From the NCBI RefSeq assembly GCF_006345805.1, contig NW_021824555.1:1-17919 (forward strand): a stretch of DNA of 17,919 nucleotides, in the 5' to 3' direction. Source of the stretch: Octopus sinensis (taxonomy: Eukaryota). Shown one piece after another: positions 1-17,919 of this stretch. The translations under genes were made by a program, and so were the position numbers. The stretch's first letter is position 1, and the number at the start of each line of letters is the position of its first letter. The notes beneath the pieces were generated by a model. It was not told the DNA's origin. It searched no databases and saw nothing but the letters and a program-made list of their open reading frames with translations.

Positions 1-77
1 GAGTAAACACATAAATGAAACAAGGTGAAAAAAGAGTACTCACATACCAGTGGTAGAGTAAAATGCTTTAAATAAAG

Positions 78-109
<32 letters not shown>

Positions 110-325: not shown

Positions 326-647
<322 letters not shown>

Positions 648-988: not shown

Positions 989-1125
989 ATAGGCGTAGAT
1001 CTTTGGCTGAAGAGGTTACTACGTAACTACTCCGATTCAGTTTCAGTCACACTGCACAGGTGAATATCTACTATAGCCCCCGGGTCGACTAAGGTCTGGC
1101 GAGTGAATTTGATCGACGGACATTG
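989..1125 (+). mobile_element. Highly diverged copy of the head/body of SINE family A
   Basis: ATAGGCGTAG..TGGCTG..TTCAGTCACACTGC..TCTACTATAGCCCCGGGTCGACTAAGG..GTGAATTTGATCGACGGA aligns by eye with the intact copies at 8166, 10137 and 16101. Confidence 0.7.
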
Positions 1126-1440: not shown

Positions 1441-1517
1441 AAGATAGCTTAACTGTGCTCTAAATGGAGGTGTAGTCCAATACTATTTTATGGACTCAAC
1501 CATGTTCTAATATTATG

Positions 1518-1550
<33 letters not shown>

Positions 1551-1568
1551 ATATATATATATAATAAT

Positions 1569-1822
1569 AAATGCGCCCTTTAAAGCCTAGCCAGGCTCAT
1601 TGGCCCGGTTTCCCGGTTTCCTGGTTTTAATAGCGTATGTGTTCCCGAGCTGGACGGAACGCCAGTCCATCGCAGCGTTACTCATTTTTGCCAGCTGAGT
1701 GGACTGGAGCAACGTGAAATGAAGTCTTTTGTTGAAGAACACAACGCGTCGCCCGGTTCAGGAATCGAAACCATAATCTACGATCATAATGCTGACAGCC
1801 TAAGCACTAATCAACGCGCCTA
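1569..1822 (-). mobile_element. tRNA-derived SINE (family C) with a (TAT)n/(TA)n tail
   Basis: The minus-strand head carries B box GGTTTCGATTCC followed by TGAACCGGGCGA, nearly identical to the head of the 2569 element. The body has GCTGCGATGGACTGGCGTTCCGTCCAG, which resembles the V-SINE domain (from recall). Confidence 0.75.
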
Positions 1823-1835
1823 CAGACACACACAC

Positions 1836-1868
<33 letters not shown>

Positions 1869-1897
1869 CATATATCTTATTGTGTCTGAGAAGAGAC

Positions 1898-2077
1898 ATT
1901 CTCTCTTAGTGCCCTTATTAATTTAACACACACACCGGTCTGATTTCCTCTCAATAGCTTATTCATTTTTACTAAAACTTTCGTTGCAACTCGCAACCTT
2001 TTCAATATTCGTTGACTATTAATGAGAGGAAATCAAACCGGTGAGTGTTGTAAATTAATAAGGCATTAAAAGAGAAT
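1898..2077. mobile_element. Foldback/MITE-like element with ~60-bp imperfect inverted arms
   Basis: 1898-1958 (ATTCTCTCTTAGTGCCCTTATTAATTTAACACACACACCGGTCTGATTTCCTCTC) is the near reverse complement of 2017-2077 (GAGAGGAAATCAAACCGGTGAGTGTTGTAAATTAATAAGGCATTAAAAGAGAAT). It is flanked by TA/CA microsatellites. Confidence 0.7.
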
Positions 2078-2156
2078 CACTCACCCCAGATAAAATATGC
2101 TTCAACACACGAATTCCCATAAAGAATCCTGTAAACCAAATACAAAAATGAAATAT

Positions 2157-2193
2157 GCATGTGTGTGTGTGCGTGCATGTGTGCGTGTGTTTG

Positions 2194-2232
<39 letters not shown>

Positions 2233-2257
2233 TGTGTGTGTGTGTGTGTGTGTGTGC
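2157..2257. repeat. (TG)n/(TA)n microsatellite
   Basis: Directly visible. Confidence 0.95.
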
Positions 2258-2284
2258 ACAAACACATGGGTGTTTGTGTAAGTG

Positions 2285-2500
2285 TATGTGGATCTGTGTT
2301 CGTCTCCCGCCAAAGCTTCACAACCGGTGCTGGTACGCTTACGTCCCCGTACCTAGTGTTTCAGCAAAGGCGACTGATAGAGTAAGTAACAGACTAACAA
2401 AACGTAACTACTGGGATCTATTCATAGGACTAAAGCTACTTCTACGCGGTGCCCCAGCATGGCCACAGTCTGATGACTGAAACAAATGAAAGATAAATGG
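2285..2500 (+). mobile_element. Old diverged 3' half of SINE family A
   Basis: ACAACCGGTGCTGG..TACGTCCCCGT..GCAAAGGCGACTGATAGAGTAAGTA..GGTGCCCCAGCATGGCCACAGTC..TGACTGAAACAA matches the tails at 8400-8560 and 16350-16510. Confidence 0.75.
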
Positions 2501-2568
2501 TGAACAGTAAAAAAAAAAAATGGGTTGCTGGGTGGATTGGAGGAAGTCTACATCCAGTTGTTTTATGT

Positions 2569-2950
2569 GGAGGCGCAATGGCCCAGTGGTTAGGGCAGCG
2601 GACTCGCAGTCGTAGGATCGCGGTTTCGATTCCTAGACCGGGCGATGTGAGTGTTTATTGAGCGAAAACACCTAAAGCTCCACGAGGCTCCGGCAGGGGA
2701 TGGTGGTGATCACTGCTGTATTCTTTCGTCACAACTTTCTCTCACTCTTACTTCCTGTTTCTGTTGTACCTGTATTTCAAACGGCCGGCCTTGTCACACT
2801 CTCTGTCACGCTGAATATCCCCGAGAACTACGTTAAGGGTACACGTGTCTGTGGAGTGCTCAGTCACTTACACGTTAATTTCACGAGCAGGCTGTTCCGT
2901 TGATTCGGATCAACCGGAACCCTCGTCGTCGTAACCGACGGAGTGCTTCC
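2569..2950 (+). mobile_element. Full-length tRNA-derived SINE (family D) with a 13-bp target-site duplication
   Basis: A box TGGCCCAGTGG and B box GGTTTCGATTCC. ACATCCAGTTGTT flanks it at 2550-2562 and 2951-2963. A second head copy lies at 6339. Confidence 0.92.
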
Positions 2951-3216
2951 ACATCCAGTTGTTCTACCTGATGGCTGTAGACAAATGTCTATTACACCCC
3001 GCCTTCTTCCTCATCTCATTCCTGTTCTTTTATCTCTTCATGTTCTTCTTCCCATTTGTCCTCTGCTTCATCCTTTCTCTTCTATCTTGTCCTTTGTGTA
3101 CCCTCCTCATCAATATCACCATCATTATGTAGTTTCTGTCTCATACACGTGGTAGTATCTATCTTATTGCCTATCTGCTTGTCTGCCTGATTGTACGTCT
3201 GAATGCATGTCTGTCT

Positions 3217-3220
3217 ATCC

Positions 3221-3270
<50 letters not shown>
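3217..3270. repeat. (CTAT)n microsatellite, left flank of the 3271-3591 element
   Basis: Directly visible. Confidence 0.95.
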
Positions 3271-3591
3271 GACCGAGGTTACCGTGGTCTTTTCCGTAGA
3301 CTTTTCTTTCCACGGGTAAACCTCACCTGTCCTCCCCTTTACACTTCATATTGACATTTCTGTGATTACGATCCCTATTGATCAACTTTTTTTTCCTCTC
3401 CCCTTTTCTTTTTTTTCCTCTCCCCCCCCCCCCCCTTTTTTTAAAATCCTCCCCTTTTTTGTCCTCTTTCTTTCCATTTACGATCCCTTTTGATCGAAAA
3501 CCAAACCCCCTTCTTTTACCCCCAAAAGAAAAGCTCTACCTTGTAATTTTGTCCTGTCTGTGTGCAGCCCTGTGTGGCTAATAAAGAAACA
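3271..3591 (+). mobile_element. Headless retroposon fragment (probable LINE 3' UTR) embedded in (CTAT)n
   Basis: It has no tRNA boxes. The last 42 nt (3550-3591) match the family-B SINE tail at 14921-14962 at 33/42 positions, ungapped. It contains a pyrimidine-rich interior, a 5' hairpin and an internal 17-nt duplication. Confidence 0.55.
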
Positions 3592-3612
3592 TATCTATAT
3601 ATCTATCTATCA

Positions 3613-3679
<67 letters not shown>

Positions 3680-3680
3680 G
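3592..3680. repeat. (CTAT)n microsatellite, right flank
   Basis: Directly visible. Confidence 0.95.
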
Positions 3681-3760
3681 ATCTGGCTGTCTATGTATCG
3701 ATAGACAAGTAGAGATATAGACATATAGACGTAGATATAGATAGATAAATGTAATATCGA

Positions 3761-3937
3761 TTACGAAGTTTCCTGGAAATGAAGGTATCTATCTATATAT
3801 ACATCTATCTGTCTGTGTGTCTGTCTGCCTGTCTGTCTATCTGTCTGACTATGTGTGTGTGTGTATGTGTAAATATATAAATACACACACACACACATAT
3901 ATTTAGTGAGAGAGAGATAGGTAGATAGATAGGTAGG

Positions 3938-4021
<84 letters not shown>

Positions 4022-4060
4022 TGTAGTCTCTTTTACGAAGTTGCCTGGAAGTGAAAGTAT
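3761..4060. repeat. Compound microsatellite block bracketed by 28-bp direct repeats
   Basis: TTACGAAGTTTCCTGGAAATGAAGGTAT (3761-3788) and TTACGAAGTTGCCTGGAAGTGAAAGTAT (4033-4060) are 25/28 identical. They enclose (TCTA/TCTG)n-(GT)n-(AC)n-(GATA)n-(GA)n. Confidence 0.85.
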
Positions 4061-4413
4061 ATGGGAATGTTTCTGTATAAAAATCTTGTAAGTTTGTCGT
4101 ATTAGTTCATGATAACGATTTCCTGCGTGTATCTGCCACGGAATCATGCTTCGACTAGATATATTCATTTGCCAAGAATTTAATGGGAAAGTCTAGAAGA
4201 TTTTGTTGATTAAACGACGTATCAAAAGAGAAACACTTATTGAATTCTGTTAGAAATCTTGGCATATTTCAGCCATGTTCAGTATAGTTTAGCCAAAAGA
4301 AAATAAAATGCGTTCTTGTGAAAGTTTAATATCAAGATTAAGATTTTTAAAACTGTTTCAGCCTGATCATCGTTAGTGTTATCCTTGTTAATGGTTTTAT
4401 TATTACAAAGATA

Positions 4414-4495
4414 TTTGCTTAGCGGCATTTTATCCGTCTTTACGATTTGAGTTCATATTCAGCCGTCGCCGATTTTGCCTTCCATCCTTTCGATG
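4414..4495 (+). mobile_element. Diverged fragment of SINE family B
   Basis: TGCTTAGCGGCATTT..TTTACGATTTGAGTTCATATTC..GATTTTGCCTTCCATCCTTTCG resembles 14770-14850. Confidence 0.6.
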
Positions 4496-4499
4496 AAAA

Positions 4500-4720
4500 A
4501 ACAAGTTGAGCATTGCTTAAGCGAAGGCTGATCTGCATGTTGCGAGCCAATTGACGTAGGCTGGCAAAGTCTTGTGAGGCATTGACACAGCGAAGCTCTG
4601 CCTGAGCGTGGAGATATTGGTACATCTAGGTAGAGAGAGCAAACGATCCATCACAGAATCTGAAGTGAAGGCCCCTAGGTGGCAGTTTTCAGGTAGGGAG
4701 CTATCAGTATCATTAGCATC
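4500..4720 (-). mobile_element. Very decayed RTE-like LINE C-terminal fragment
   Basis: The minus strand reads ENCHL..MDRLLSLPRCTNISTLRQ..SMPHKTLP..WLATCRSA. This resembles the post-RT region of RTE ORF2 (FHLRCLR.IL.I.WQDR...VL.RA..TSI.TLL.Q...RM....LP...GELA.G.R). Confidence 0.4.
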
Positions 4721-4726
4721 ACTGAC

Positions 4727-4850
4727 AAATTATGTCGGTGTCATCTTCCATCCTTTTCGTGGTCGATAAGTTAAGTATCATTCAAGTACGTGGCATCAAT
4801 ATAATCAATTTCTCCCTCCCCTCAAAAGCTAGTGGCACTGAGACCATTAT
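4727..4850 (+). mobile_element. Diverged fragment related to SINE family B
   Basis: TTCCATCCTTTTCGTGGTCGATAAGTTAAGTATCA..TCAATATAATCAAT resembles TTTCATCCTTTCGGGGTCGATGAATTAAGTACCAG..TCGATGTAATCGACT at 14836-14898. Confidence 0.55.
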
Positions 4851-4864
4851 TAGTAACAGATATT

Positions 4865-5069
4865 CTCTTTTACACTTTTACTTGTTTCAGTCATTTGACT
4901 GCGGCCATGCTGGAGCACCTCCTTTAATCGAGCAACTCGACCCCGGGACTTATTCTTTTGTAAGTCCAGTACTTATTCTATCGGTCTCTTTTGCCGAACC
5001 GCTATGTAACGGGGACATAAACACACCAGCATCGGTTGTCAAGCAATGCTAGGGGGACAAACGCACACA

Positions 5070-5107
<38 letters not shown>

Positions 5108-5272
5108 TACGACGGGCTTCTTTCAGTTTCCGTCTACCAAATCCACTCACAGGGCTTTGGTCGACCCGAGGCTATAGTAGAAGACACTTGCCCAAGGTGC
5201 CACGCAGTGGAACTGAACCCGGAACCATGTGGTTGGTAAACAAGCTACTTACCACACAGCCACTCCTACGCC
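4865..5272 (-). mobile_element. Full-length tRNA-derived SINE family A
   Basis: Reverse complement of the 8169-8584 copy: head GGCGTAGGAGTGGCTGTGTGG (A box) and GGTTCAGTTCC (B box), a central domain, an internal TA/CA microsatellite and a tail ending in (AAAAGAGT)-like repeats. Confidence 0.93.
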
Positions 5273-5559
5273 ATACATTAACACAAAATTGTTTTGAGAT
5301 ATTGTGAATTATTAACTGCCGCATACATATCATATTACCATATACAGGCACCCTTCAAAGGAAGACGAAATGGAAAGACCAGCCTGAACTGGATGGAATT
5401 AAAAACGTATCACAACAAATTAAATACAATCAAATATTTTTTCTTTAAATTTAGCAAATTAGAAATAAATTCCCGATCACTGCTTTTAAGGCGCCAAATG
5501 CTTTGCATAATTTCCACCTTAATTGAGATACCGCCTAGAATATTTTTACTCTTTATTCA

Positions 5560-6950
5560 TCTGGGAACGACATGTGGGTAATCCTGGGGTTCCCTCACCT
5601 AAATTCCCGGCCCTACCCTACCACTTGTCTTGAAATTGATTACATTTAGTTGTGAGAAGGAAGTGGACTGAGACCACACGCACGCGCGGTATTTGTTTCT
5701 CAAGAATGCTGAATTGTTCAACGCTGAGTCAACAACCTATTCTCGTCTAGTGAAGGATCAGCATAGTTTTTATTGAACGGGAGTTCAGCTACCTCGTAGT
5801 AGAAACAAAACTGATATGCTACTGGATAAAAATCAAACGAGAAGTAGAGAATCTTGGTGTAAAAGGACTTCAGACTTATCCATTCGTATTAAGAAAGGAA
5901 GTAAAATAAGACTTTTCTCCCCACCTCATTCCGATACTGGGAGCTACTGTTACGTCAGGATTACTGGATCCATCAAAGGAGGAGACGATTTCAAGAACAT
6001 CATAGAACAGAAATGAAGAGAGATAAAAATATTTAATTAATTCTGTTTCTTTTCCGCCATCGCTTTTGTAATGGGTCCGATTTTAGACGCAGAGGGAGCG
6101 TGTGTGTGTGAATGATATTAAAATATGCCAGTGATAATTTGGTTGTAATATGGGAAAAGTTTGTTGCTGTGGTGTACCTCCATAACCCGGAGATCTACTG
6201 CAAGAGAGCGCAGGCTCAAATTAAGGCCTCTCATACTGGACAATTCAAAGAATAGAGTCCAAGACCAATGTGGACAATCTATTCCCAAAGGTAAACATGA
6301 GCTTGCATACGTGCAACGCCCCTACGTTTTTACGTTGTGGAGGCGCAATGGCCCAGTGGTTAGGGCAGCGGACTCGCGGTCGTAGGATCGTGGTTTCGAT
6401 TCCCAGACCGGGTGTTGTGAGTGTTTATTGAACGAAAACACCTAAAGCTCCACGAGGCTCCGGCAGGGGATGGTGGTGATCCCTGCTGTACACTTTCATC
6501 ACAAATTTCTCTCACTCTTACTTTTTTACAAGCAAAGTTGTAGAAGTATCGATAACAACTGAAAGTCAACAAGACCAGGGAGAAAGCCTGCAACCTGGGA
6601 AACATAATGTTGTGCCGCCCCTGAACTGGAAGCCAAAAGGGAGGTGGGAGAGAGGTCACCTTAAAAATATCTGGGGTGAAGTTACTTAGGCAGTATTGAA
6701 AAATCAGAGATCCAAGAAGGGAAAAGCAGTAAAGAGGCACTAGATTCGAGAGCAGTGAGGTAAAGTTGTCAATGATCCATACTCCACAGAGAGTGATAGG
6801 CTAAAAAAATAGATTATATGATAGTTTGCCCAAATCATTGTTTTACTTTACCCAGCGTCGGAGCCCCAGGGTTGAATGCGAATTTGCGGCGCCTACTGAG
6901 CACGGAAATAAATTGCATGCCGACAGATGGCGTTAATGGAATAAATCATC
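5560..6950 (+). mobile_element. Possible extremely decayed Ty3/Gypsy pol relic (protease-RT-RNase H order)
   Basis: Scattered motifs in the expected order, across frameshifts: VILGFPHL, IKREVENLGV, PFVLRK/KGSKIRLF, VCVNDIKI (at the YxDD position), RERRLKLRP, RRLLSTEINCM. No intact catalytic motif is present, so this is weak. Confidence 0.25.
6339..6523 (+). mobile_element. 3'-truncated copy of SINE family D
   Basis: Nearly identical to 2569-2752. A possible 7-bp TSD TTTTTAC lies at 6327-6333 and 6523-6529. Confidence 0.92.
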
Positions 6951-6955
6951 ATACA

Positions 6956-7554
6956 TATTTCTTTACTACCCACAAGGGGATGAACACAGAGGGGACAAAC
7001 AAGGACAGATAAACGGATTGAGTCGGTTACATAGACCCCAGTGTGTAACTGGTACTTATTTAATCGACCCCGAAAGGTTGAAAGGCAAAGTCGACCTCGG
7101 CGGAATTTGAACTCAGGACGCAGCGGCAGACGAAATACCTATTTATTTACTACCCACAAGGGGCTAAACACAGAGGGAACAAACAAGGACAGATAAACGG
7201 ATTGAGTAGGTTACATCGACCCCAATGCGTAACTGGTACTTATTTAATCGACACCGAAAGGTTGAAAGGCAAAGTCGACCTCGGCGGAATTTGAACTCAG
7301 AACGCAGCGGCAGACGAAATACCTATTTCTTTACTACCCACAAGGGGCTAAACACAGAGGGGACAAACAAGGACAGATAAACGGATTGAGTCGGTTACAT
7401 CGACTCCAGTGCGTAACTGGTACTTATTTAATCGACCCCGAAAGGTTGAAAGGCAAAGTCGACCTCGGCGGAATTTGAACTCAGAACGTAGCGGCAGACG
7501 AAATACTGCTAAGCATTTCGCCCGGCGTGCTAACGTTTCTGCCAGCTCGCCGCC
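6956..7554 (-). mobile_element. SINE family B with its body triplicated (3 x 184 bp), under one TSD
   Basis: Units start at 6956, 7140 and 7324, with a single head at 7507-7554 (minus strand GGCGGCGAGCTGGCAGAAACGTTAGC). AATAAATCATCATACA (6940-6955) and AATAAATCATTATACA (7559-7574) flank the whole array. Confidence 0.93.
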
Positions 7555-8168
7555 GCTTAATAAATCATTATACAAAAAGATAAGAGCTAAATTGGACTTG
7601 TTGGATTGAACTCAAAACTTAAACCATAAATATCTTTTGTACGTCAGTCTTTCCCCCCCCCCCTTTCCCATGTCCCTAGACATCGTTAACGATAAATGAT
7701 TGATGTACTTCTGCGAGACACCGAGTCTGTGTGTTAGTATGTGAGGTTTTGTACGTTACAGACTCTACAGAGTAAATTGTCCAGTGATTAAACACAGAAA
7801 AATAACACCACCAAGACAACAAAGCGTAAAAAAAAAATAATAATTTTAAAATTCCATGTTGCTAGGAAATCGATACTTTGTTGACTTTTTGGCTCAGATC
7901 GATATTATTAGATTATTTGACTATTTGATAAAATGTGTGGTTTTTAAAAAAAAAAAAGAATATTTACAAAGCCAAGTCCTTTATGTGTGTGTGTGTTTTG
8001 AAATTTTGTTGTTTTCCTACGCTTAATATTTCAGTTTCTGGTTAACTAAGGAATTTCAATAATGCACTTGGTTTTTCATTATGGAGCTGAATGCTGGCGG
8101 TGAGGTCGATAGAAGCTGATATTGGGACCCATGTTCCAATCAGGATTAACCATTTCAAGACATTTATA

Positions 8169-8584
8169 GGCGCAGGAGTGGCTGTGTGGTAAGTAGCTTG
8201 CTAACCAACCACATGGTTCCGGGTTCAGTCCCACTGCGTGGCATCTTGGGCAAGTGTCTTCTGTTATAGCCCCGGGCCGACCAATGCCTTGTGAGTGGAT
8301 TTGGTAGACGGAAACTGAAAGAAGCCTGTCGTATATATGTATATGTATATATAAGTGTGTGTGTGTATTTGTTTGTGTTTGTCCCTCTAGCATTGCTTGA
8401 CAACCGATGCTGGTGTGTTCACGTCCCCGTCACTTAGCGGTTCGGCAAAAGAGACCGATAGAATAAGTACTGGGCTTACAAAGTATAAGTCCCGGGGTCG
8501 ATTTGCTCGACTAAAGGTGGTGCTCCAGCATGGCCGCAGTCAAAATGACTGAAACAAGTAAAAGAGTAAAAGAGTAAAGAGAGT
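8169..8584 (+). mobile_element. Full-length tRNA-derived SINE family A
   Basis: A box TGGCTGTGTGG, B box GGTTCAGTCCC, central domain, internal microsatellite and (AAAAGAGT)n tail. Confidence 0.95.
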
Positions 8585-8739
8585 ATTTACTTTTCATACA
8601 TGTACGGTTTGAAACTTGTCAACGAATTAATAGAAAAGTTTCTTGGTGGTTGTTCAGCATCTAGGAATAGCAGCCAAATTGCACTCGATTTATACACAAT
8701 CGTCCGAAATGAAGAACACGTTGGCTAATGGGTTAGTAA

Positions 8740-8898
8740 CAAGCATGGCTGTGTGGTTAAATAACTATTCAACCATCTGGTTTCGAGTTCTGTCTAATTA
8801 CGTGGCATCTTGGGCAAATGTGGACTACCATAGCTCCAGACCAAACAATGCTTTGTGTGTGAATCTGATAGACGGGGACTGTGTGGAAGCCGCTCGTA

Positions 8899-8939
<41 letters not shown>

Positions 8940-9040
8940 GCATGTATATGTGTGTGTTTATGTATGAGTGTAATACTGGGCTCGGTCTGTTAAATTCAGA
9001 CCTTGGGTGGCTCAGCGTGGCCGCAGTCTAATACCGGAAT
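8740..9040 (+). mobile_element. Old diverged SINE family A copy with a (CA)n linker
   Basis: CATGGCTGTGTGGTTAA..CGTGGCATCTTGGGCAAATGT..TGATAGACGG head and a GGTGGCTCAGCGTGGCCGCAGTC tail remnant. Confidence 0.7.
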
Positions 9041-9170
9041 CGAACACTGATCTGATGCCTCATCTTATGCCTTCTATCTATAGATCCTTTTAAGCAAACT
9101 GATCCCAGCAAGAAAGCCACAATTTTGGTTAAATAATGTTTTGAAATTCACCTGATGCGCATATATATAT

Positions 9171-9275
9171 GCGAGACAGTAAAAACGATCTGCCGGATTT
9201 GCAAGGACACATGAGACCTAGCGTTGTCCAGAAGACACCGCCCTTTCAATTGGTTAGTTCTGGATGTTATTCACC
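9171..9275 (-). repeat. ~105-bp local duplicate of the mariner segment at 11026-11134
   Basis: Near-identical direct repeat: a 4-bp indel plus a few substitutions. The minus strand encodes HPELTN..DNARSHVSLQIRQ and shares the same inactivating stops. Confidence 0.9.
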
Positions 9276-9704
9276 TTCGAAACGCAGAGTAGATGAAACC
9301 ATGGCGACTGAAGAAGGTCAATTTTCCTTGTGTTATTTGTCCTGTACTCTATTCTTTCATTGTTTAAGAAAAATTTCCAGTTCTTTGGTTTTGTGTTTAT
9401 GTTTTCGTTTCTCATTGTGTTTGGCGTTTTTTTTTTGTGTCCTGCATCCATATATGTATGTATATATACATGTAGAGGTAGGTACGTACATATATGTATT
9501 ATATATGCATATGTTTTATTTATTAATTAATTATATGACGGAACGCACGCATCCATTTCTAAGTAAGATCTTTCTATACATATATATATATTAGTATAGT
9601 ATTTTTATATTATATTTATATATTATATATGTAAGCATGTTGGTACAAACAGGAGAAACAGAACTCAAAATATGAGTATATATGTATATTTTTATCAATA
9701 TGTA

Positions 9705-10083
9705 GGAGAAGCAATGGAGTGACTCAAGATCTAAGACTGCCATAAAAGAAGTCAACTGTGGCAAAGCCCCGGGAGCAGATGGAATTTTTGCAGAACTGTA
9801 CAAGAGCTTGATATTACAGCTTTTAGTGCATCATGTCATCATTCTATTCATTTGGGAAGTAGTCTTTCGGGATTCCACAACAATTACACTCTACAAGAAC
9901 AAAGGAGCCAAAACACAGTGGCACTTACAGGGGTTTTCCCCTGTTTTATATAAGTGGAAAAATCCTAACCCGCATCACTAGCGTCTCCGAGGGCAACTTG
10001 CCTGAAGCCCAGTATGGATTCCATCTTGGTGCTTTCTGTGTGTCAGGTCAAGGAGAAAAGTATCGAACAAAAGATGTTCTTGA
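9705..10083 (+). mobile_element. RTE (BovB-like) LINE reverse transcriptase, N-terminal piece A
   Basis: KTAIKEVNCGKAPGADGIFAELYK (from 9733) ... ITLYKNKG ... YRG ... GKILTRI ... SEGNLPEAQYGF ... QVKEKSIEQKM, with frameshifts. This matches RT domains 0-2 of RTE ORF2 and stops just before FIDLTKAFD. Confidence 0.9.
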
Positions 10084-10136
10084 CCCAGTGATTTGTTTTG
10101 TTTTGGTTTTGGTTTTGTTTCTTTACAGTTCTTTAC
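10084..10136 (-). mobile_element. Mariner relic 2, segment 3' of the SINE insertion
   Basis: The minus strand CTGTAAA-[CAAAA-type repeats]-AAATCACT resembles DCKNHL interrupted by a microsatellite. It is collinear with the 10970-11445 piece and with 17789 onward. Confidence 0.45.
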
Positions 10137-10139
10137 ATA

Positions 10140-10969
10140 GGCGCAGGAGTGGCTGTGTGGTAAGTAGCTTGCCTACCAACCACATGGTTCTGGGTTCAGT
10201 CCCACTGCGTGGCATCTTGGGCAAGTGTCTTCTGCTATAGCCTCGGGCCGACCAATGCCTTGTGAGTGGATTTGGTAGACGGAAACTGAAAGAAGCCTGT
10301 CGTATATATACTCTTTTTACCTGCTTCAGTCATTTGACTGCGGCCATGCTGGAGCACCGCCTTTAATCGAGCAACTCGACCCCGGGACTTATTCTGTTGT
10401 AAGCCCAGTACTTATTCTATCGGTGTCTTTTGCCGAACCGCTAAGTAACGGGGACATAAACACCCCAGCATCGGTTGTCAAGCAATGCTAGGGAACAAAC
10501 ACAGACACACAAACACACACACGCATATACATATATATATATATACATATATACGACGGGCTTCTTTCAGTTTCCGTCTACCAAATCCACTCACAAGGCT
10601 TTAGTCGGCCCGGGGCTATAGTAGAAGACAGTTGTCCAAGGTGCCACGCAGTGGGACTGAACCCGGAACCATGTAGTTGGTAGACAAGCTACTTACCACA
10701 CAGCCACTCCTGCGCCTATATGTATATATATATATATGTGTATGTATATGTTTGTGTGTCTGTGTTTGTCCCTCTAGCATTGCTTGACAACCGATGCTGG
10801 TGTGTTTTCCTCCCCGTCACTTAGCAGTTCGGCAAAAGAGACCGATAGAATAAGTACCGGGCTTACAAAGAATAAGTCCCGGGGTCGATTTGCTCGACTA
10901 AAGGCGGTGCTCCAGCATCGCCGCAGTTAAATGACTGAAACAAGTAAAAGAGTAAAGAGTAAAGAGAGT
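10140..10969 (+). mobile_element. SINE family A (host copy) split by a nested copy
   Basis: Head/body at 10140-10303 and tail at 10745-10969 are in the same orientation. The nested element sits in the internal (TA)n linker. Confidence 0.92.
10311..10716 (-). mobile_element. Full-length SINE family A nested antisense in the host copy
   Basis: Complete reverse-complement copy (tail 10311-10510, head ending at 10716), flanked by TA repeats. Confidence 0.93.
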
Positions 10970-11445
10970 CCTCAAAAGAATTGAGGTTATTCCTGAGAGT
11001 ACGTTGGTTGTGGTGTGACATTCCAGCGAGACAGTAAAAATGATCTGCCGGATTTGCAAGGACACATGAGACCTAGCGTTGTCCAGAACGGAGACACCGC
11101 TCTTTCAATTGGTTAGTTCTGGATGTTATTCACCAATTGCCTCCTTTAATTCGTCTCTTTAATATACAACAATAATTGTTTGAATTGAACGTCTGATTTT
11201 GCGGAAGGAGTTCATACTACACAATGCCTTTCTAACCCACCAGATACAGAGCAACATGTTTCTCCATATAGTGACGGGCTTCGGAGCGATTAAAGTTGAA
11301 GTATTTTATATCGATTGTAATTCTTCCTTAAATACGCCTGACCTTGAACCAAACGTTAAACTCTATTTTAGAAACAGATTACTGGAATAGCCAGAAGAGA
11401 ACACGAATTTCACATAATAATTAACCTTTTTCATTTAAATTCATT
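10970..11445 (-). mobile_element. Mariner transposase relic 2 (main part)
   Basis: The minus strand reads PKP..MLLCIWW (11237-11251), then GIV*YELLPQNQTFNS, YC..DELKEAI, GE*HPELTN*K..DNARSH (11066-11083) and WNVTPQPTYSQE, matching mariner PKP..VMLCVWWD.KG.IYYELL..NQTINS..HDNARPH..WDVLPHPPYSPD. A weaker N-terminal similarity (HFRYL) may extend it to about 11545. Confidence 0.85.
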
Positions 11446-11641
11446 TTGTTTTATTTTATAATTTTATTTCCATTCTTTCTTACCAAGAAGATAAATTCCA
11501 ATATTAAATACCGGAAATGCTATTTTATTTCATCGGAATTTCATATTTTTCAAATCAATTTTATATATCTCTATCGAGAAATAGAATTACAACAAAAGGA
11601 CAAAAATTAAGCTCATAACAAAAGCAACACTTAAATAATAA

Positions 11642-11649
11642 TCATAACC

Positions 11650-11727
<78 letters not shown>

Positions 11728-11733
11728 TGATGA
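11642..11733. repeat. (AAT)n microsatellite
   Basis: Directly visible. Confidence 0.95.
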
Positions 11734-12009
11734 TTATCGTCATTGTTATGAATAACCTTTGCAATATTAATAATTCTCTTACTACTAAAAAACAAAGAAT
11801 ATCTTCAAAAATTCTAGGTATGGAATTGGTTAGCTATACCGATAGTCTGATAAATACATGTTCTTCATTTTCGTTATTTTTGTTCTTTCAAAACATGTGT
11901 TGTGTTTTTAATTGTGACTCGACTCGAAATAAAAGTATTTAACTACATAACTTTTGATCAATTTATTTCAAAAATTTTAAGATTTAAGTATAATTACAAC
12001 GCGACGTAG

Positions 12010-12527
12010 ATTGCTTCTTCCTCTCTTTCTCAAATGCTCCTTTCCTATTTCTTAACCATGCTTCCTTGTTTCTGTCTCCTCTGTTAACCGTTCTGTCTGT
12101 GCCTTCTTCTCACTCTTCTCCTCTTTCGTCCCCTCTCTCCCCTCTCTGTCCTTTTCTCTTTCAGAACACACACACATATAGGCACATCCATTCATACACA
12201 CAGTACCCATACCTATATATATGTGTATATATATACATACGTACATATATATACCTGTAAGTATATAATATATATATATATAATATATAATATATATATA
12301 TATAGAGACAAATATACACACATATATATATATATATATATATCTATATTATATACATATATATATAGATAAACAGATATATACACACACACACACAACA
12401 CACACCATATATATATATATATATCTATACACACACATATATATATATATACACACACAATACACACACATATATATAGATATAATATATATATCCTGTA
12501 AGTATATAGAAATAATGTATGTATGTG

Positions 12528-12575
<48 letters not shown>

Positions 12576-12620
12576 GCTTGTGAATTGTATGCGTGTGTGA
12601 GAGTGTGAGTGTGTATGTTT
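12010..12620. repeat. Pyrimidine-rich tract followed by a long degenerate (TA)/(CA) microsatellite
   Basis: Directly visible. It explains the YI/CV-rich spurious ORFs. Confidence 0.9.
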
Positions 12621-13348
12621 ATACATTTGTTTTAATTAAATACACCTCGTGTATAGAATCATTTTCTAAGGTCTTAGAATACAATACAATTAAATGTGAA
12701 TTATAAACTTCCATAAAATCTTTACTCTTCAACTGAACTTATTTCAAATTTAATTATATAGCCAACAGGATTGGAAAATTTCCTCTTTGAAATTTTGGCA
12801 TACATTTTTATTTATATTTATTCCATTTAAATTTAACTTATTTTCCAATATTTTATTTTGTATTCTTTGTTTCTGCGTTGGAATTGTTGTTTTTCTTCTG
12901 CTCTTTCCTTAGCTTAAGGTTATAGCCATTTTGCAGCAGAACAAGAATGAATTAAGCGATAAATAATTTTGTTAGTATAAAGTCTTTAAAAGCTCCAACG
13001 TTCGCTGTGGAATTGATTCAATGCTGGTCTGTACAAATTTGTGAACTTGATAATTGATAGCATTGGGAAGATTTAACATTTTGTTGCTAAATTTTAAACA
13101 AAATAAGACAAAATTCTAAATACGTAGAAGGACATAGAAAACTTGTCCTTATATCAGGCGTTAGATATTTTGACATCTGCTAATAACATTTCGGTTTTGT
13201 GTAACACAAAACAAAACTTGCTGAACACTGTAGGTGCATTGTCTTTGTTTAAGCGTCTTGAACAGTTTCAAACCCGTAACGACGCCTCGATATTTGAAGA
13301 GCAAAAGAGCACGTATTTATATAACAGATTTCTTTTGTTTTATTGCAG

Positions 13349-13651
13349 ACTAGCAGTATTGCCCGGCGTTGCTCGGGTTTGTAAGGGAAATAACTATATA
13401 AGCATTTTTAGAGAGTTACTTCCCTTATATAATAGCAAAAATGCATTAAAAATGGGAAAAAATGATGGTAATTTTTTTTTTTAATCGTAGACTCATCGTA
13501 GACGCGCGCTAATACTCAGAAGGGCTTGATATGAATCACGACTATAAGGTACCCGCTTTTGGTTAAACTGCACCGCAAAATGTGGGAGTAGTTAGGAATC
13601 TAAATCGTAGGAGACAGACACTCACACAACTTCACTTTTATATATAAAGAT
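13349..13651 (+). mobile_element. Non-autonomous Helitron-like element (Lep1/HINE-type termini)
   Basis: It starts ACTAGCAGTATTGCCCGGCGTTGCTCGGG, with a subterminal CCCG..CGGG hairpin, and ends CACAACTTCACTTTTATATATAAAGAT. This end architecture is typical of Lep1-like Helitrons. It has no coding capacity. Confidence 0.65.
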
Positions 13652-13835
13652 ATTGCCATACTCGGCTGGACTTGTGTGTTTATTATTCATGGCTTCCTGG
13701 GTTCCAACGTCATTAACATTTTTTTAGCCCTTTGCCTTTTTTTTATCGTCGGTGTTGCTGTTATTAGCCAAGTAATAGTGTCGATTTAATCGACTGAACC
13801 CTTCCCTAAATTTACGCTCCTGTATTATATTAGAA

Positions 13836-13894
13836 ATAACGACGACGACGACAACAACAACAACAACAACAACAACAACACTAATAGAAAAAGA

Positions 13895-13938
<44 letters not shown>

Positions 13939-13950
13939 AAAGAAGAAGAG
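13836..13950. repeat. Compound trinucleotide microsatellite (GAC)n(AAC)n(AAG)n
   Basis: Directly visible. Confidence 0.95.
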
Positions 13951-13989
13951 GCTCGGGGTGAGCCAGAAAACTACATAAAAATGCAACGG

Positions 13990-14235
13990 TGTGTGTATGC
14001 ATTCATGTATGTATGTATGTATGCATGTATGTATGCTTGAATGTATGAATGTATTTATGTACGTGTGTATGGTGGTAGGTAATTATATATGTATATAAGT
14101 ATGTAGGTAGGTAGGTTGCTATCTGTATATTTATATACATATATACATACATACATGCATACATGTATGTGTTTATGTATTACTATACACACATATTAAA
14201 TATATGCATATACACATACATACACACACATACTT
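13990..14235. repeat. Degenerate (TATG)/(CATA) microsatellite
   Basis: Directly visible. Confidence 0.9.
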
Positions 14236-14503
14236 ATGTAAAGAAATGAGAGAAAATGGAATGAACGAATTATTTAAAATCACTACAATTGATTCGACAG
14301 ATTCTCACACCTGTAGTTCATAGGTGAGATGCCGTGCAGTCATTATCTTACATCCCAGGTGTAGGATGCGCCTCTTCAGGTGATTGCTTAAATAAGTTGC
14401 TCGTTAGACACTCTCGCCATTTCAATCTGTTTTATACTGTATACCAAGATGGATGTGTTAATTCTAGCAGCTCACAGATAAAACCAAAACCATAGATACA
14501 CCC

Positions 14504-14540
<37 letters not shown>

Positions 14541-14731
14541 ACACACACACACACACATCCATTTTTTCGTTCTCTCGCCATTTTTGTCTCCTTATCCCTT
14601 TCGGTCGAAGACCGTAGACTCAAAACTTTAAAGACTTTTGCATGCTTTCTGTGCGTCAACATAATACACTTGCTTATTGTTCTCTCACGTAACTTCGCCT
14701 TTTTTTTCTGTAAATTTGAACATGCATGAAA

Positions 14732-14962
14732 GGCGGCGAGCCGGCAGAAACGTTAGCACGCCGGGCGAAATGCGTAGCCGTATTTCGTCTGCCGTTACGT
14801 TCTGAGTTCAAATTGCGTCGAGGTCGACTTTGCCTTTCATCCTTTCGGGGTCGATGAATTAAGTACCAGTTACGCACTGGGATCGATGTAATCGACTTAA
14901 TCCGTTTGTCTGCCCTTGTTTGTCCCCTCTGTGTTTAGCCCCTTGTGGGTAGTAAAGAAATA
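14732..14962 (+). mobile_element. Monomeric SINE family B
   Basis: Head GGCGGCGAGCCGGCAGAAACG, B-box-like GAGTTCAAAT and tail ending GTAAAGAAATA. A probable TSD ACATGCAT lies at 14720-14727 and 14970-14977. Confidence 0.93.
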
Positions 14963-14992
14963 TATATATACATGCATATAAATATATATTAA

Positions 14993-15319
14993 CCGGCCGC
15001 CTAAACGTTTTTCTGCCAAATAGGGGTAGCTTATCCTTACATTTGAGAATTTAAAATCACTTCTTTAACTTTCTAAGACATCTCAACGCTTCTAAAGCAA
15101 ACTTCCTTTGTTTACGTTCATCGTAATTTGAATTTAACGCATGATAGCGTCTCATAAAGCGAGATTTCTATTTATCTTAAATTTGCAGAGGAATTTGTGG
15201 TGTTGGCGGTTTAGCTTAATGGTTCAGAGCACCACGACGCGTAACCACTGAGTTGTGAGTTCGTGTCTCATAGCCAGCCGCCAACACTTCTTTTCTGCAA
15301 AATACGGGTAGCTTATCCT
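14993..15319 (+). repeat. Tandem duplication with ~281-bp period (45-bp diverged direct repeats)
   Basis: CCGGCCGCCTAAACGTTTTTCTGCCAAATAGGGGTAGCTTATCCT (14993-15037) versus CCAGCCGCCAACACTTCTTTTCTGCAAAATACGGGTAGCTTATCCT (15274-15319). Confidence 0.85.
15200..15294 (+). ncRNA. Pol III type-2 small RNA-like unit (tRNA-like or vault-RNA-like; may be a pseudogene)
   Basis: A 12-bp terminal stem (15200-15211 with 15276-15287), A box TAGCTTAATGG (15212-15222), a D-like stem, a T-arm GTGAG-TTCGTGT-CTCAT (15255-15271) and a TTCTTTT terminator. The anticodon stem is unpaired. Confidence 0.45.
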
Positions 15320-15374
15320 GTTCAGGCTATATTATTAGCATTATCCTGCGCTTGATTATTATTATTATCATTAC

Positions 15375-16013
15375 TTCTTTTTTCTTCTTTCAAATTTGCT
15401 TCCATTTCTTGCCGAGTGTCTTCCCGACTCCTAGGGCAAAGAAACTCATAGTATACATTGGTAGGCCATTAAACCAAACTCAATAGTTCGTTCATTAAAA
15501 AAAATTTTTTTTTAAGTTAAATTAAATACATGAGCAGCAACAGTTCTCACATCGACAATGCTCTTCTCAATACGTGTGATGTACCAGTTAAGACAATCTT
15601 TTGCACTTCTTGCAGGGATGGTAAGCCAGGGATCATTCTCATATAATTTTCGGTTCCCTTCTTGATCATTCCTAGTGCTCCTACGATCACTGGTATTGTA
15701 ACCGCCTGAGATGCCACAATTTTCTCAATTTCAATGAGTAGGTCTTTATATTTTCTGAGCTTGTCAAACTCTTTCGCTGAGATGTTATGATTACAGGGGA
15801 TGCTCATGTCGATCAATAAGCAAACTTTATTGTTTTGGTCTTTCACAACAATATCTGGTTTATTGGCCTTGATGGTTCGGTCTGTATGTACTGGAAAGTC
15901 CCACAGAATGGTTACATTTTCTCCTTCAGTTACAGCCTCAGGGTGGTGATTATACCACTTGTCGGCAGTTTTGATATTGTAATGCCTACTTATTAGCCAG
16001 TGTAGATATTGGC
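15375..16013 (-). mobile_element. 5'-truncated R4/Dong-type non-LTR retrotransposon (restriction-like endonuclease domain plus 3' UTR)
   Basis: Open frame 16011 to 15547: QYLHW..KWYNHHPEAVTE..TILWDFPVHTDRTIKANKPDIVVKD..LIDMSIP..KEFDKLRKYKDL..TIPVIVGALG..LQEVQKIVLTGTSHVLRRAL*. This is a PD..D-type RLE C-terminus. (TAA)n tracts lie on both sides. Confidence 0.92.
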
Positions 16014-16014
16014 G

Positions 16015-16032
16015 TTATTATTATTATTATTA

Positions 16033-16090
<58 letters not shown>
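16015..16090. repeat. (ATT)n microsatellite, 5' flank of the R4/Dong copy
   Basis: Directly visible. Confidence 0.95.
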
Positions 16091-16096
<6 letters not shown>

Positions 16097-16103
16097 GTAC
16101 ATA

Positions 16104-16271
16104 GGCGTAGGAGTGGCTGTGTGGTAAGTAGCTTGCTTACGAACCACATGGTTCCGGGTTCAGTCCCACTGCGTGGCATCTTGGGCAAGTGTCTTCTACT
16201 ATAGCCTCGGGCCGACCAAAGCCTTGTGAGTGGATTTGGTAGACGGAAACTGAAAGAAGCCCGTCGTATAT

Positions 16272-16310
<39 letters not shown>

Positions 16311-16526
16311 ATGTTTGTGTGTCTCTGTTTGTCGTCCCACTAACGTCGCTTGACAACCGATGCTGGTGTGTTTACGTCTCTGTAACTTAGCGGTTCGGCA
16401 AAATAGACCGATAGAATAAGTACTAGGCTTACAAAGAATAAGTCCTGGGGTCGATTTGCTCGACTAAAGGCTGTGCTCCAGCATGGCCACAGTCAAATGA
16501 CTGAAACAAGTAAATGAGAAATGAGA
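16104..16526 (+). mobile_element. Full-length SINE family A
   Basis: Same head, central domain, linker and tail as the 8169 copy. Confidence 0.95.
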
Positions 16527-16584
16527 TATATTATACTACATTATATTACATACATCCTATCTTATTTGTTTTGATAAAATATGA

Positions 16585-17788
16585 CAGGTCAAAACTGGAA
16601 GAACACGGGGGTTCACAGATGTCGCAGCGACAGTCTGTTGATCGGACTGAGGCGGATGCTGCCATGTGACGTCTTTCTCTGGATCATTGAGACGCTAACG
16701 CCGGTCCTCTTCGAAGGCAGCTGTTGCTCGTGTGGTGAGAGACCGCCACGCTGATCTAACTGCGGCAGGGTCTACCGCTCCAGTTGATGTTATTTTTCAG
16801 AGTGTCTTTGTAGTTCAGGTTACGACTTCCTCGTTTGTGTGAGCTCTGCATGATCTCGCAGTACAATAGCGGTCAGTTTTAAAGCATTCTGATGACATTA
16901 TCAGTCCAGCGTAACTGAGCCTTCAGCAACATTGATTCAATATTCGTTGAACATGCTCTGTGCAATACTTTATAGGTTTGTCACATTGTCCTGCCAGCAA
17001 ATGTCCTTGTGTGAAACAGTTCCAGTGTTTGATTTGCCGACGTCCATAAAGTAGTGTAGCGATGGCTTCATCCTTGTAGATCTTGAGCTTTGTCGATAGT
17101 TTGATACCTTTCTACTGGTGAACTTTCACTTTCAGTGTTCCAAGTGATTGGCTGGCCTTGTGGATTCTGAATAAAATTTTGCTGTCTAATGATCCATCAA
17201 CAGAGATTGTGTTGCCAAGGTACTTGAAACTTTCCACACACTTAAGCTGGACTGCTTCAATGGTGATATTTGGTTTGGGGTGAATTTTGTTCGAGGCCGC
17301 TTGAAGTAGAACCTCAGTTTTCTCAAGGCTCGTGGTCAGTTCAAAGAGACTTGATGCTTTTGCAAAGCGATCGACAATGGTCTGCAAGTGATTTTCCTTG
17401 TATGCCATAAAGACACAGATATATGCAAAACAGGAATTCCGCGATGAGTTTCCACTGACTTGGTTCGAGCAGAGAGTCAGCGGAGGTTAAAAACAGAGCC
17501 GTCTTAGCGATATTTAAGGCATGTGCACAGGTCTAGGTCTTTCACTGAGTAAAATACGCCCTGTGTGAAGAACAAGTTGAGCAAGACGGGAGCGAGTACG
17601 CAGACCTGTTTCACACAATTGGAGTTGTTGAAAGAGTTGGTGTAATCGCCATTGCAACGAATTTGACCGGCCATATTCTTAAGAAAGTGTCTTATCAGTG
17701 TGGTGAACTTATGTGGGCAACCAAGCTTAGTTAGGATGGGCCAGAAATCTTCTCTGTCGACTTGTCTACAGCTTTGGTCAGTTCATGA
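16585..17788 (-). mobile_element. RTE (BovB-like) LINE, piece B: RT C-terminal half to the 3' end
   Basis: The minus strand reads ELTKA..VDREDFWPILTKLGCPHKF..VKQVCVLAPVLLNLFF..YR*DGSVFNLR..LQTIVDRFAKA..KTEVL..FKYLG..RIHKASQSLG..GIKLSTKLKIYK..WQDNV..LLKAQLRW..YKDTLK..CRCDIC, with many stops and frameshifts. Confidence 0.93.
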
Positions 17789-17919
17789 TCAAGAAAGATT
17801 TCTGGGAGGATAGAATCAAGAAGCTACTTCAAAGATGGCAGAATGTAGTGGAACGAAATGGGACATATATGGATGAATACAGGTATCTTTTATCATTTAT
17901 ATTTCATTTGCTTCATTTA
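17789..17919 (+). mobile_element. Mariner transposase C-terminus and 3' region
   Basis: From 17791: KKDFWEDRIKKLLQRWQNVVERNGTYMDE, matching the mariner end (FWEDGIMKLPQRWQKVVEQNG.Y). Confidence 0.8.

What the first reader, a model, noticed from the sequence alone, without database searches (positions are those of the whole stretch)
10077..17795. Probable ~7.7-kb inversion shown by two reciprocally split transposon fossils and an inverted microhomology
Seen: RTE piece A (+, 9705-10083) ends at ..IEQKM, and RTE piece B (-, 17788 downward) begins at (D/E)LTKA. These are adjacent segments of the RTE RT (EQNMDLYAVFIDLTKAF, established) lying in opposite orientations. Independently, the mariner running on the minus strand from 11445 (..DNARSH..WNV.P.P.YS.., interrupted by the SINE nest, then a DCKNH-like remnant at 10136-10084) lacks its C-terminus. 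That missing end (FWED..QRWQ.VVE.NG.Y) starts on the plus strand at 17789. TTCTTGA (10077-10083) and TCAAGAA (17789-17795) are exact reverse complements. Inference: flipping 10084-17788 repairs both elements at once, which points to a microhomology-mediated inversion that could be dated by the TEs it cuts.
Basis: partly seen in the sequence, partly recalled or inferred. Interest (0 to 1): 0.75.

Follow-up and report, generated by a model that had tools for sequence, protein, structure and literature searches.

The report
7.7-kb inversion splitting two transposon fossils
A 7.7-kb piece of octopus junk DNA was flipped end to end at some time in the past, cutting one dead retrotransposon and one dead mariner transposon in two; this is real in the assembled sequence but is an ordinary small rearrangement.

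Summary
The core observation holds. An RTE-like reverse-transcriptase fossil and a mariner fossil are each split. Their halves lie in opposite orientation at about 10080 and about 17782.

Evidence for the inversion:
- Seven independent intact RTE-family copies from the same genome give two opposite matches on the window. After flipping 10084-17788 in silico they give one collinear match.
- The two mariner pieces are collinear on more than eight genomic copies.
- On solved mariner transposases the pieces cover SETMAR residues 64-159 and 199-226.
- Both junctions are unique in the genome, lie outside high-copy repeats and contain no N.

- Mariner sequence runs unbroken from 17782, so TCAAGAA (17789-95) is internal mariner sequence, not the crossover.
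- The right switch is at 17781|17782, where CAG is shared, inside a 20-nt patch that both families match.
- At the left junction about 24 nt of RTE and about 5 nt of mariner are missing.
- Ten bases there (10077-10086, including TTCTTGA) cannot be assigned.

The best reading is a two-break inversion repaired by error-prone end joining.

The window is a whole unplaced 17.9-kb scaffold of an assembly whose statistics match Octopus sinensis. No second copy of the locus and no reads were available, so an assembly artefact, polymorphism and age remain untested. No gene is involved. Interest is low.

The parts
9733..10076 (+). RTE-like non-LTR reverse-transcriptase fossil, 5' piece (A). It is 5'-truncated at about 9733 and ends ..IEQKM (ATG 10074-10076).
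   Evidence: Collinear DNA matches of 66-71% to genomic copies L002-L012, all ending at 10070-10076. Copies of the family carry Pfam RVT_1.
10077..10086 (.). Ten unassigned bases at the left junction (TTCTTGACCC).
   Evidence: Match to the 24 nt that follow ATG in the RTE family is at chance level, 6/19. The 7-mer is the exact reverse complement of 17789-17795. Chance is 0.03% at fixed positions and 1.5-3.4% with slop.
10087..10136 (-). Mariner remnant next to the left junction. It reads ..ACTGTAAAG..AAATCACT on the minus strand. It contains a (GTTTTG)n expansion at about 10095-10125 and the left target-site copy of the outer SINE (10124-10136).
   Evidence: Compared by eye with the mariner-family sequence GACTGTAAAAACCACTTAG in the copies; the automatic fragment placement in that call put this piece elsewhere. 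Collinear HSPs. Target-site duplication read.
10137..10966 (.). SINE nest inside the mariner. The outer SINE (+) is 10137-10309 plus 10717-10966. It is split by an inverted inner SINE (-) at about 10310-10716.
   Evidence: Matches of 87-95% to the SINE carried in L003, L007 and L018. The tail and target-site copy are at 10960-10979.
10967..11450 (-). Mariner transposase fossil, catalytic-domain part (..CIWW..LDNARSHV..WNVTPQPTYS..), with stops, frameshifts and a deletion of about 47 nt.
   Evidence: Translation. DNA matches of 70-74% to L015, L020, L021, L023 and L024. SETMAR transposase residues 64-159 of 226 at E 1.5e-4 and Mos1 184-278 of 345.
10084..17781 (.). The inverted segment, with limits good to about +/-10 nt. 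It carries the mariner's 5' part, simple repeats, a young LINE 3' fragment, a SINE and the RTE's 3' part.
   Evidence: Flip test. Junction analysis.
16585..17781 (-). RTE-like RT fossil, 3' piece (B). It starts at LTKAVD (CTGACCAAAGC, reverse complement of 17771-17781) and runs to the element's 3' end at about 16585.
   Evidence: Matches of 68-79% to more than 10 copies, all ending near 16585-16590 and at 17780-17791. Weak RVT_1 hit at profile positions 81-136.
17772..17791 (.). A 20-nt zone at the right junction that both families match. The best switch point is 17781|17782, with CAG shared.
   Evidence: RTE copies reach at most 17791 and mariner copies start as early as 17772. 17772-17781 matches RTE 10/10 against about 7/10 for mariner. 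17782-17799 matches mariner 16-17/18.
17782..17890 (+). Mariner C-terminal tail (QFMIKKDFWEDRIKKLLQRWQNVVERNGTYMDEY). TCAAGAA at 17789-17795 is native mariner sequence. The scaffold ends at 17919.
   Evidence: Matches of 75-85% to 18 genomic copies. SETMAR residues 199-226 of 226 at E 0.016, the top hit.

Best explanation
A balanced two-break inversion of about 7.7 kb occurred in TE-rich, non-coding octopus DNA.

Inferred ancestral order: 5'-truncated RTE-like element (A then B, plus strand), then about 5 kb of other sequence, then a mariner copy (plus strand).

One break fell in the RTE between the codons ..EQKM DLYSVFID and LTKA... The other fell in the mariner between ..CKNHLD and QFM.., about 105 nt before the end of its reading frame. 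The segment between the breaks was re-ligated in reverse.

The right junction (17781|17782) is clean. It lies on a shared CAG/CTG inside a patch where the antisense mariner and the RTE happen to resemble each other (about 14-15 of 20-21 nt).

The left junction is untidy. About 24 nt of RTE and about 5 nt of mariner are gone, and 10 unassignable bases sit in their place. Seven of these are an exact inverted copy of mariner sequence lying 8-14 nt inside the other junction.

This pattern is that of error-prone end joining of two double-strand breaks: short microhomology at one junction, and a small deletion plus short filler, possibly templated, at the other. It is not homologous exchange between inverted repeats.

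Shown: the reciprocal split, the collinearity after flipping and the uniqueness of the junctions. Inferred: that the breaks were simultaneous, the repair pathway and the origin of the filler.
For: RTE:
- On the window as given, each intact genomic copy gives two oppositely oriented HSPs, 9733-10076 and 16585-17791.
- After flipping 10084-17788, each gives one HSP across the junction. Examples are L002 at 761 bits, L009 at 728 and L036 at 710. This holds for seven independent loci.
- A and B are about equally diverged from the same copies: 68/71%, 71/71%, 69/68% and 70/70%.

Mariner:
- With the SINE nest left out and 17789-17919 appended, more than eight copies match collinearly on one strand. 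The true neighbour used as a control gives no tail match.
- On solved structures the two pieces cover SETMAR 64-159 and 199-226 without overlap.
- The window's two pieces diverge from the family in the same way as the copies diverge from each other.

Junctions:
- Both are unique in the 2.72-Gb assembly.
- There is no N in the window.
- No long inverted repeat lies at the breakpoints.
- Mariner continuity from 17782 is shown in the alignment. The uniform RTE family sequence across the junction is shown.
Against: - No reads, no second haplotype and no orthologous locus could be examined.
- The window is an entire 17.9-kb unplaced scaffold of a long-read assembly with only 86% of its bases placed in chromosomes. 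Such scaffolds are enriched for problem sequence.
- The right junction lies only 131-138 nt from the scaffold end.
- The left junction can be aligned in at least three ways (filler; a short inverted duplication followed by a 12-nt deletion; or RTE with two small deletions running through TGACC). The repair mechanism is therefore an inference from about 30 nt of old, mutated sequence.
Confidence: 0.78

Rival explanations
1. Assembly artefact. The true genome has the un-inverted order, and the assembler or a chimeric long read flipped the internal 7.7 kb of this small unplaced scaffold.
For: The window is a complete 17,919-bp unplaced scaffold. Only 86% of the assembly's bases are in chromosomes. 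The right junction is about 135 nt from the scaffold end. No independent copy of the locus exists in the assembly to cross-check.
Against: - A wrong flip needs two false joins that are reciprocal to within about 25 nt.
- Both junctions lie in old, effectively unique sequence (70-80% identical to the nearest copies), not in the 88-98% identical SINE or LINE copies where mis-joins arise.
- There are no Ns.
- Missed-adapter or foldback artefacts give inverted duplications, not a balanced inversion. No such palindrome is present.
- The deletions and filler at the left junction look like a repair scar rather than a software join.
Confidence: 0.12
2. Exchange took place within a pre-existing 7-bp inverted repeat (TTCTTGA in the RTE, TCAAGAA in the mariner), with breakpoints 10083|10084 and 17788|17789 and no loss of sequence.
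For: The 7-mers are exact reverse complements flush with the left junction. Only 0.03% of random breakpoint pairs show this at fixed positions.
Against: - Mariner-family sequence continues without a gap from 17795 back to 17782 (TTCATGA, 7/7). Under this model those bases would be RTE.
- TTCTTGA matches the corresponding RTE-family sequence only at chance level.
- The model needs a private deletion of about 10 nt in the RTE and about 12 nt in the mariner, each abutting the 7-mer.
- With realistic uncertainty in the breakpoints, the chance of a 7-nt inverted match rises to 1.5-3.4%.
Confidence: 0.07
3. No rearrangement. Two unrelated RTE fragments and two unrelated mariner fragments happen to lie where they do, or the RTE halves result from twin priming at insertion.
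For: The genome is packed with decayed copies of both families.
Against: - The end of A and the start of B coincide on the family to within 24 nt out of the roughly 1.55 kb of the element that this 5'-truncated copy covers.
- The two mariner pieces coincide to within about 10 nt out of the roughly 0.6 kb of the element that the two pieces cover.
- Each A or B end abuts the matching mariner end.
- Twin priming leaves the two halves touching. It does not leave them 7.7 kb apart, and it cannot split a neighbouring mariner.
Confidence: 0.03

Closest known systems
Small balanced inversions with end-joining scars (NHEJ / alternative end joining, including polymerase-theta-type templated insertions), as catalogued in human, Drosophila and other genomes. 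This comparison rests on established knowledge and was not tested here.
   Same: Two breaks in non-homologous sequence. A few nt of microhomology at one junction. A deletion of a few to tens of nt plus a short filler at the other junction, and the filler matches nearby sequence in inverted orientation.
   Different: The repair pathway cannot be shown from sequence alone. The junctions are old and mutated, so the scar is read through noise.
Inversions with short inverted duplications at both breakpoints, produced by staggered breaks
   Same: A short sequence (TCAAGAA, or 9 nt if one gap is allowed) is present at both ends in inverted orientation.
   Different: The left copy would need a later 12-nt deletion to fit. 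The duplicated stretch is only 7-9 nt, which is close to what chance allows.
NAHR inversions between inverted repeats (SINE/SINE or segmental duplications).
   Same: Inverted SINE pairs do exist in the window, for example 10547-10730 against 16090-16273 at 93%.
   Different: The breakpoints are not in those repeats. Only 7 nt of exact inverted identity lies at the junctions.
LINE 5' inversion by twin priming.
   Same: Two parts of one non-LTR element lie in opposite orientation with a small loss at the break.
   Different: The parts are 7.7 kb apart, and an independent DNA transposon is split reciprocally.

Membership tests
Balanced two-break inversion | Two unrelated sequences are each split, with the halves in opposite orientation and paired reciprocally at the two junctions. 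| tested here: met
   RTE A(+)/B(-) and mariner left(-)/tail(+).
Balanced two-break inversion | Reversing the segment restores collinearity of both sequences with intact relatives. | tested here: met
   A single HSP across the junction for 7 independent RTE loci. Collinear mariner HSPs, with a negative control. SETMAR 64-159 then 199-226.
Balanced two-break inversion | Support from reads, the other haplotype or an outgroup showing the ancestral order. | not testable with these tools
   No reads are available. The assembly holds no second copy of the locus. The collections hold no other cephalopod genome. The junction ORF is absent from the protein database.
NAHR between inverted repeats | Inverted repeats of tens to thousands of nt spanning both breakpoints. 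| tested here: not met
   None of the 25 longest inverted pairs listed (of 304 found) lies at 10080 or 17785. Only a 7-nt exact match is present there.
Microhomology-mediated / error-prone end joining | Junction microhomology of 1-20 nt, with small deletions or templated filler. | tested here: inconclusive
   Right junction: CAG is shared inside a patch where antisense mariner and RTE agree at about 14-15 of 20-21 nt. Left junction: about 24 nt and about 5 nt are missing and 10 nt are unassigned. Alternative alignments exist.
mariner (Tc1/mariner superfamily) | Transposase homologous to Mos1/Hsmar1, including the catalytic-domain motifs. | tested here: met
   SETMAR transposase domain at E 1.5e-4 and Mos1 at E 9e-4 over about 96 residues including ..DNARSHV... 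The C-terminus matches the last 28 residues of SETMAR at E 0.016, the top hit.
mariner (Tc1/mariner superfamily) | Terminal inverted repeats and a TA target duplication. | not tested
   The 5' end is lost in simple repeats at about 11500-11750. The scaffold ends about 30 nt after the open-frame tail.
RTE clade of non-LTR retrotransposons | A reverse-transcriptase domain. | tested here: met
   RVT_1 in family copies at E 1.3e-10 and 1.3e-6. A weak hit in window piece B at E 0.01.
RTE clade of non-LTR retrotransposons | Placement in the RTE clade, by phylogeny or by a single ORF with an APE endonuclease and no ORF1. | not testable with these tools
All copies fetched are decayed, with the longest frames about 175 aa. 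Database relatives carry no clade names.
Assembly mis-join | A junction in a gap or in a high-identity repeat. | tested here: not met
   There are 0 N in the window. The junction sequences are unique in 2.72 Gb.

The most novel reading that the evidence does not exclude
The inversion is young and still segregating, or is fixed only in the O. sinensis lineage. Its structural difference from the other haplotype would then be why this scaffold stayed unplaced. It would give a base-resolved cephalopod example of an inversion scar with a templated insertion, and a clean presence/absence marker between O. sinensis and O. vulgaris.
Probability: 0.15. Interest if true: 0.35.

Novelty: new member of a known kind. 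Interest (0 to 1): 0.2.

Why it matters
This is a tidy worked example of inferring a micro-inversion from one genome alone, using two transposon fossils as built-in markers. It also shows that breakpoints proposed by eye need checking against family copies. Here the apparent 7-bp crossover turned out to be internal mariner sequence on one side.

Biologically the event is of a common kind. It lies in repeat-rich, gene-free DNA on an unplaced scaffold, so little follows from it unless it proves polymorphic or lineage-specific. In that case it could serve as a structural marker.

Tried and rejected
- Pfam on the window's own ORF pieces gave only one weak RVT_1 hit and nothing for mariner. Solved-structure searches worked instead.
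- A search of the 5.8-billion-protein database with the ORF spanning the left junction, made in the hope of finding independent assemblies of the junction, found nothing, not even the query itself.
- Naming the RTE clade from database relatives failed, because none carries a clade name.
- Rfam found no match in the window.
- A scoring script with wrongly set end gaps gave unusable numbers.
- The forced fitting-alignment profile is noisy outside true homology. I used it only qualitatively.
- An ungapped continuation of the mariner through 10074-10086 gives 7/14 matches. That is about P 0.06, and too diverged for a same-age duplicate, so I did not adopt it.
- RTE twin priming and a chance arrangement of independent fragments were considered and rejected (see the rival explanations).
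- NAHR between the window's inverted SINE pairs was rejected because the breakpoints are not in them.
Full report
**What the window is.** The window is the whole of contig C1026 (17,919 bp) of an assembly with 2,719,151,902 bases in 13,516 sequences. Those figures equal the published statistics of the Octopus sinensis assembly GCA_006345805.1: 13,516 scaffolds, 2719.2 Mb, and 86% of bases in chromosomes (Table 1 of PMC10700109). The finding therefore sits on a small unplaced scaffold. The window has no N. Its unique parts, 8600-9270 and 12650-15355, have no second copy in the assembly, so there is no alternative haplotig to compare.

**Checking the observation.**
- On the plus strand an RT fragment runs to ..SIEQKM, with ATG at 10074-10076.
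- On the minus strand from about 17791 downward an RT fragment reads ..ELTKAVD..DFWPILTKLGCPHKF... It has a weak RVT_1 hit at profile positions 81-136.
- The minus strand from about 11450 to 10967 reads as a decayed mariner transposase (..CIWW....LDNARSHV....WNVTPQPTYS..).
- The plus strand from 17779 reads QFMIKKDFWEDRIKKLLQRWQNVVERNGTYMDEY.

**RTE test against real copies.** The genome holds many decayed copies of this RT family, 66-82% identical to the window. They carry Pfam RVT_1.
- In every intact copy, piece A (9733-10076) and piece B (17791 down to about 16585) are collinear and almost touching.
- On the window as given, each copy yields two opposite HSPs.
- After reversing 10084-17788 in a script, each yields one HSP running across the junction. 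Examples are L002 at 761 bits, L009 at 728, L036 at 710, L043 at 666 and L048 at 676. This holds for seven independent loci.
- A and B are equally diverged from the same copies, so they do not look like different subfamilies.

**Mariner test.** Eighteen copies match the tail.
- In L015, L020, L021, L023 and L024 the middle piece and the tail are collinear on one strand.
- The SINE nest accounts for the gap. It consists of an outer SINE at 10137-10309 plus 10717-10966, flanked by a diverged target-site duplication of about 13 nt at 10124-10136 and 10967-10979, and split by an inverted inner SINE.
- A control in which the tail is replaced by the window's real neighbour gives no tail match.
- On solved structures the middle piece covers SETMAR transposase residues 64-159 of 226 (E 1.5e-4) and Mos1 residues 184-278 of 345. 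The tail covers the last residues, 199-226 (E 0.016, the top hit). The pieces are ordered and do not overlap.
- The tail is about 10 points more similar to other copies than the middle piece is. The copies show the same difference among themselves.

**Where exactly the junctions are, right side.** The RTE family is very uniform here. It reads ..GAACAAnnATG, then 24 nt (GATTTGTACTCTGTGTTCATAGAC, coding DLYSVFID), then CTGACCAAAGCTTTTGAC. The mariner family reads ..GACTGTAAAAACCACTTAGACCAGTTCATGAyCmAGAAAGAT...
- Window 17771-17781 (GCTTTGGTCAG) is an exact antisense match to the RTE.
- Window 17782-17799 (TTCATGATCAAGAAAGAT) matches the mariner at 16-17 of 18 positions without a gap.
- Genome-wide, RTE copies reach at most 17791 and mariner copies begin as early as 17772. 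No locus other than this one spans both.
- The switch is therefore at 17781|17782, on a shared CAG, inside a 20-nt patch where the antisense mariner and the RTE happen to resemble each other.
- TCAAGAA (17789-17795) is native mariner sequence 8-14 nt inside the junction. It is not the crossover.

**Where exactly the junctions are, left side.**
- RTE homology is solid up to 10076 and is at chance level afterwards (6/19).
- Mariner homology (antisense) is solid from AGTG at 10087. It then continues through a (GTTTTG)n expansion of the mariner's GTTTTT to TTTACAG.
- The ten bases 10077-10086 (TTCTTGACCC) cannot be assigned.
- Relative to the families, about 24 nt of RTE and about 5 nt of mariner are missing.
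- The left junction sequence is unique in the genome.

**The 7-mer.** At fixed positions, an exact 7-nt inverted match occurs in 0.03% of random breakpoint pairs in this window. With 6 or 10 nt of freedom at each end it occurs in 1.5% or 3.4%. The match is therefore suggestive, not compelling. I see three readings:
- a short filler copied in inverted orientation from the nearby mariner end, as seen in alternative end joining;
- a short inverted duplication from staggered breaks, followed by a 12-nt deletion;
- RTE sequence with two small deletions that runs through TGACC.

I cannot separate these readings. It makes 17782-17788 RTE-derived although those bases match the mariner 7/7 in register. 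It also needs a private deletion of 10-12 nt in each element, flush against the 7-mer.

**Mechanism.** The best-supported account is two double-strand breaks, one in each fossil, with the intervening 7.7 kb rejoined in reverse by error-prone end joining. That gave a clean microhomology join on the right and a deletion-plus-filler scar on the left.
- NAHR is excluded as the cause. The inverted SINE pairs and the inverted 184-bp repeats in the window are not at the breakpoints.
- Twin priming is excluded by the 7.7-kb separation and by the reciprocal mariner split.

**Could it be an artefact?** That cannot be excluded without reads, and a small unplaced scaffold deserves suspicion. Several points argue against it:
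- Two false joins reciprocal to within about 25 nt would be needed.
- Both joins lie in old sequence that is effectively unique for an assembler.
- There is no gap and no palindromic duplication.
- One junction carries a repair-like scar.

I put the artefact at about 12%.

**Age.** The inversion is younger than both insertions. Both fossils are old, about 70-80% identical to their families, and all copies fetched are decayed. Nothing gives a lower bound. The SINE nest is near a junction but not across it.

**Verdict.** The inversion is real in the assembled sequence and well supported. The proposed base-exact breakpoints and the crossover role of the 7-mer are not. The event is an ordinary instance of a known kind in gene-free repeat DNA, so interest is low.

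**A note on method.** The elements are cellular transposon fossils, not viruses. The flipped sequence was used only inside scripts for alignment.

Noticed in passing
window 1-17919: The window is the complete unplaced scaffold C1026. The assembly's size and scaffold count equal the published figures for Octopus sinensis GCA_006345805.1.
   Followed up: yes
window 10137-10966; also 4856-5273, 8162-8581, 16082-16525: Six pieces of one SINE family of about 430 bp with a tRNA-like head, 87-95% identical to genomic copies. At 10137-10966 one copy is split by a second, inverted copy, and the outer copy has a target-site duplication of about 13 nt. Rfam does not recognise the head.
   Followed up: partly
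window 15355-16013 (minus-strand ORF 15547-16014); L034:3-1964: A young repeat of about 660 bp, 95-98% identical to more than 40 genomic copies. At another locus (L034) it is the 3' end of a 654-aa open frame with RVT_1 and zf-RVT, so it probably belongs to a recently active non-LTR element. It is followed by (TTA)26 at 16015-16092.
   Followed up: partly
window 6951-7554 and 14732-14967: A 184-bp unit repeated three times in tandem (95% matches), with an inverted partner inside the inverted segment (93% complementary). The two would have been direct repeats before the inversion. The unit also occurs elsewhere in the genome, for example in L007.
   Followed up: no
window 9270-9640: A high-copy repeat of about 370 bp, 87-93% identical to the 40 best genomic copies scored among 4,926 first-look candidates, often found in inverted pairs. 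It lies just upstream of the 5'-truncated end of the RTE fossil.
   Followed up: no
window 10095-10125 and about 10990: Inside the mariner fossil, a (GTTTTG)n microsatellite appears to have grown out of the element's own GTTTTT. About 47 nt covering the ..LAPSDYHLF.. codons are deleted.
   Followed up: partly
window 1193-1348; L014:1627-1781, L022:1633-1763: A stretch of about 150 nt in the far left of the window is 74% identical to sequence lying directly upstream of the mariner tail in two other loci. This may be another element that inserts into this mariner family, or an internal variant of the family.
   Followed up: no
G000 C18:52703663-52704328 and C18:52731178-52731843: Two RTE copies 27.5 kb apart on the same chromosome give identical scores and coordinates. 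This suggests a recent local segmental duplication.
   Followed up: no
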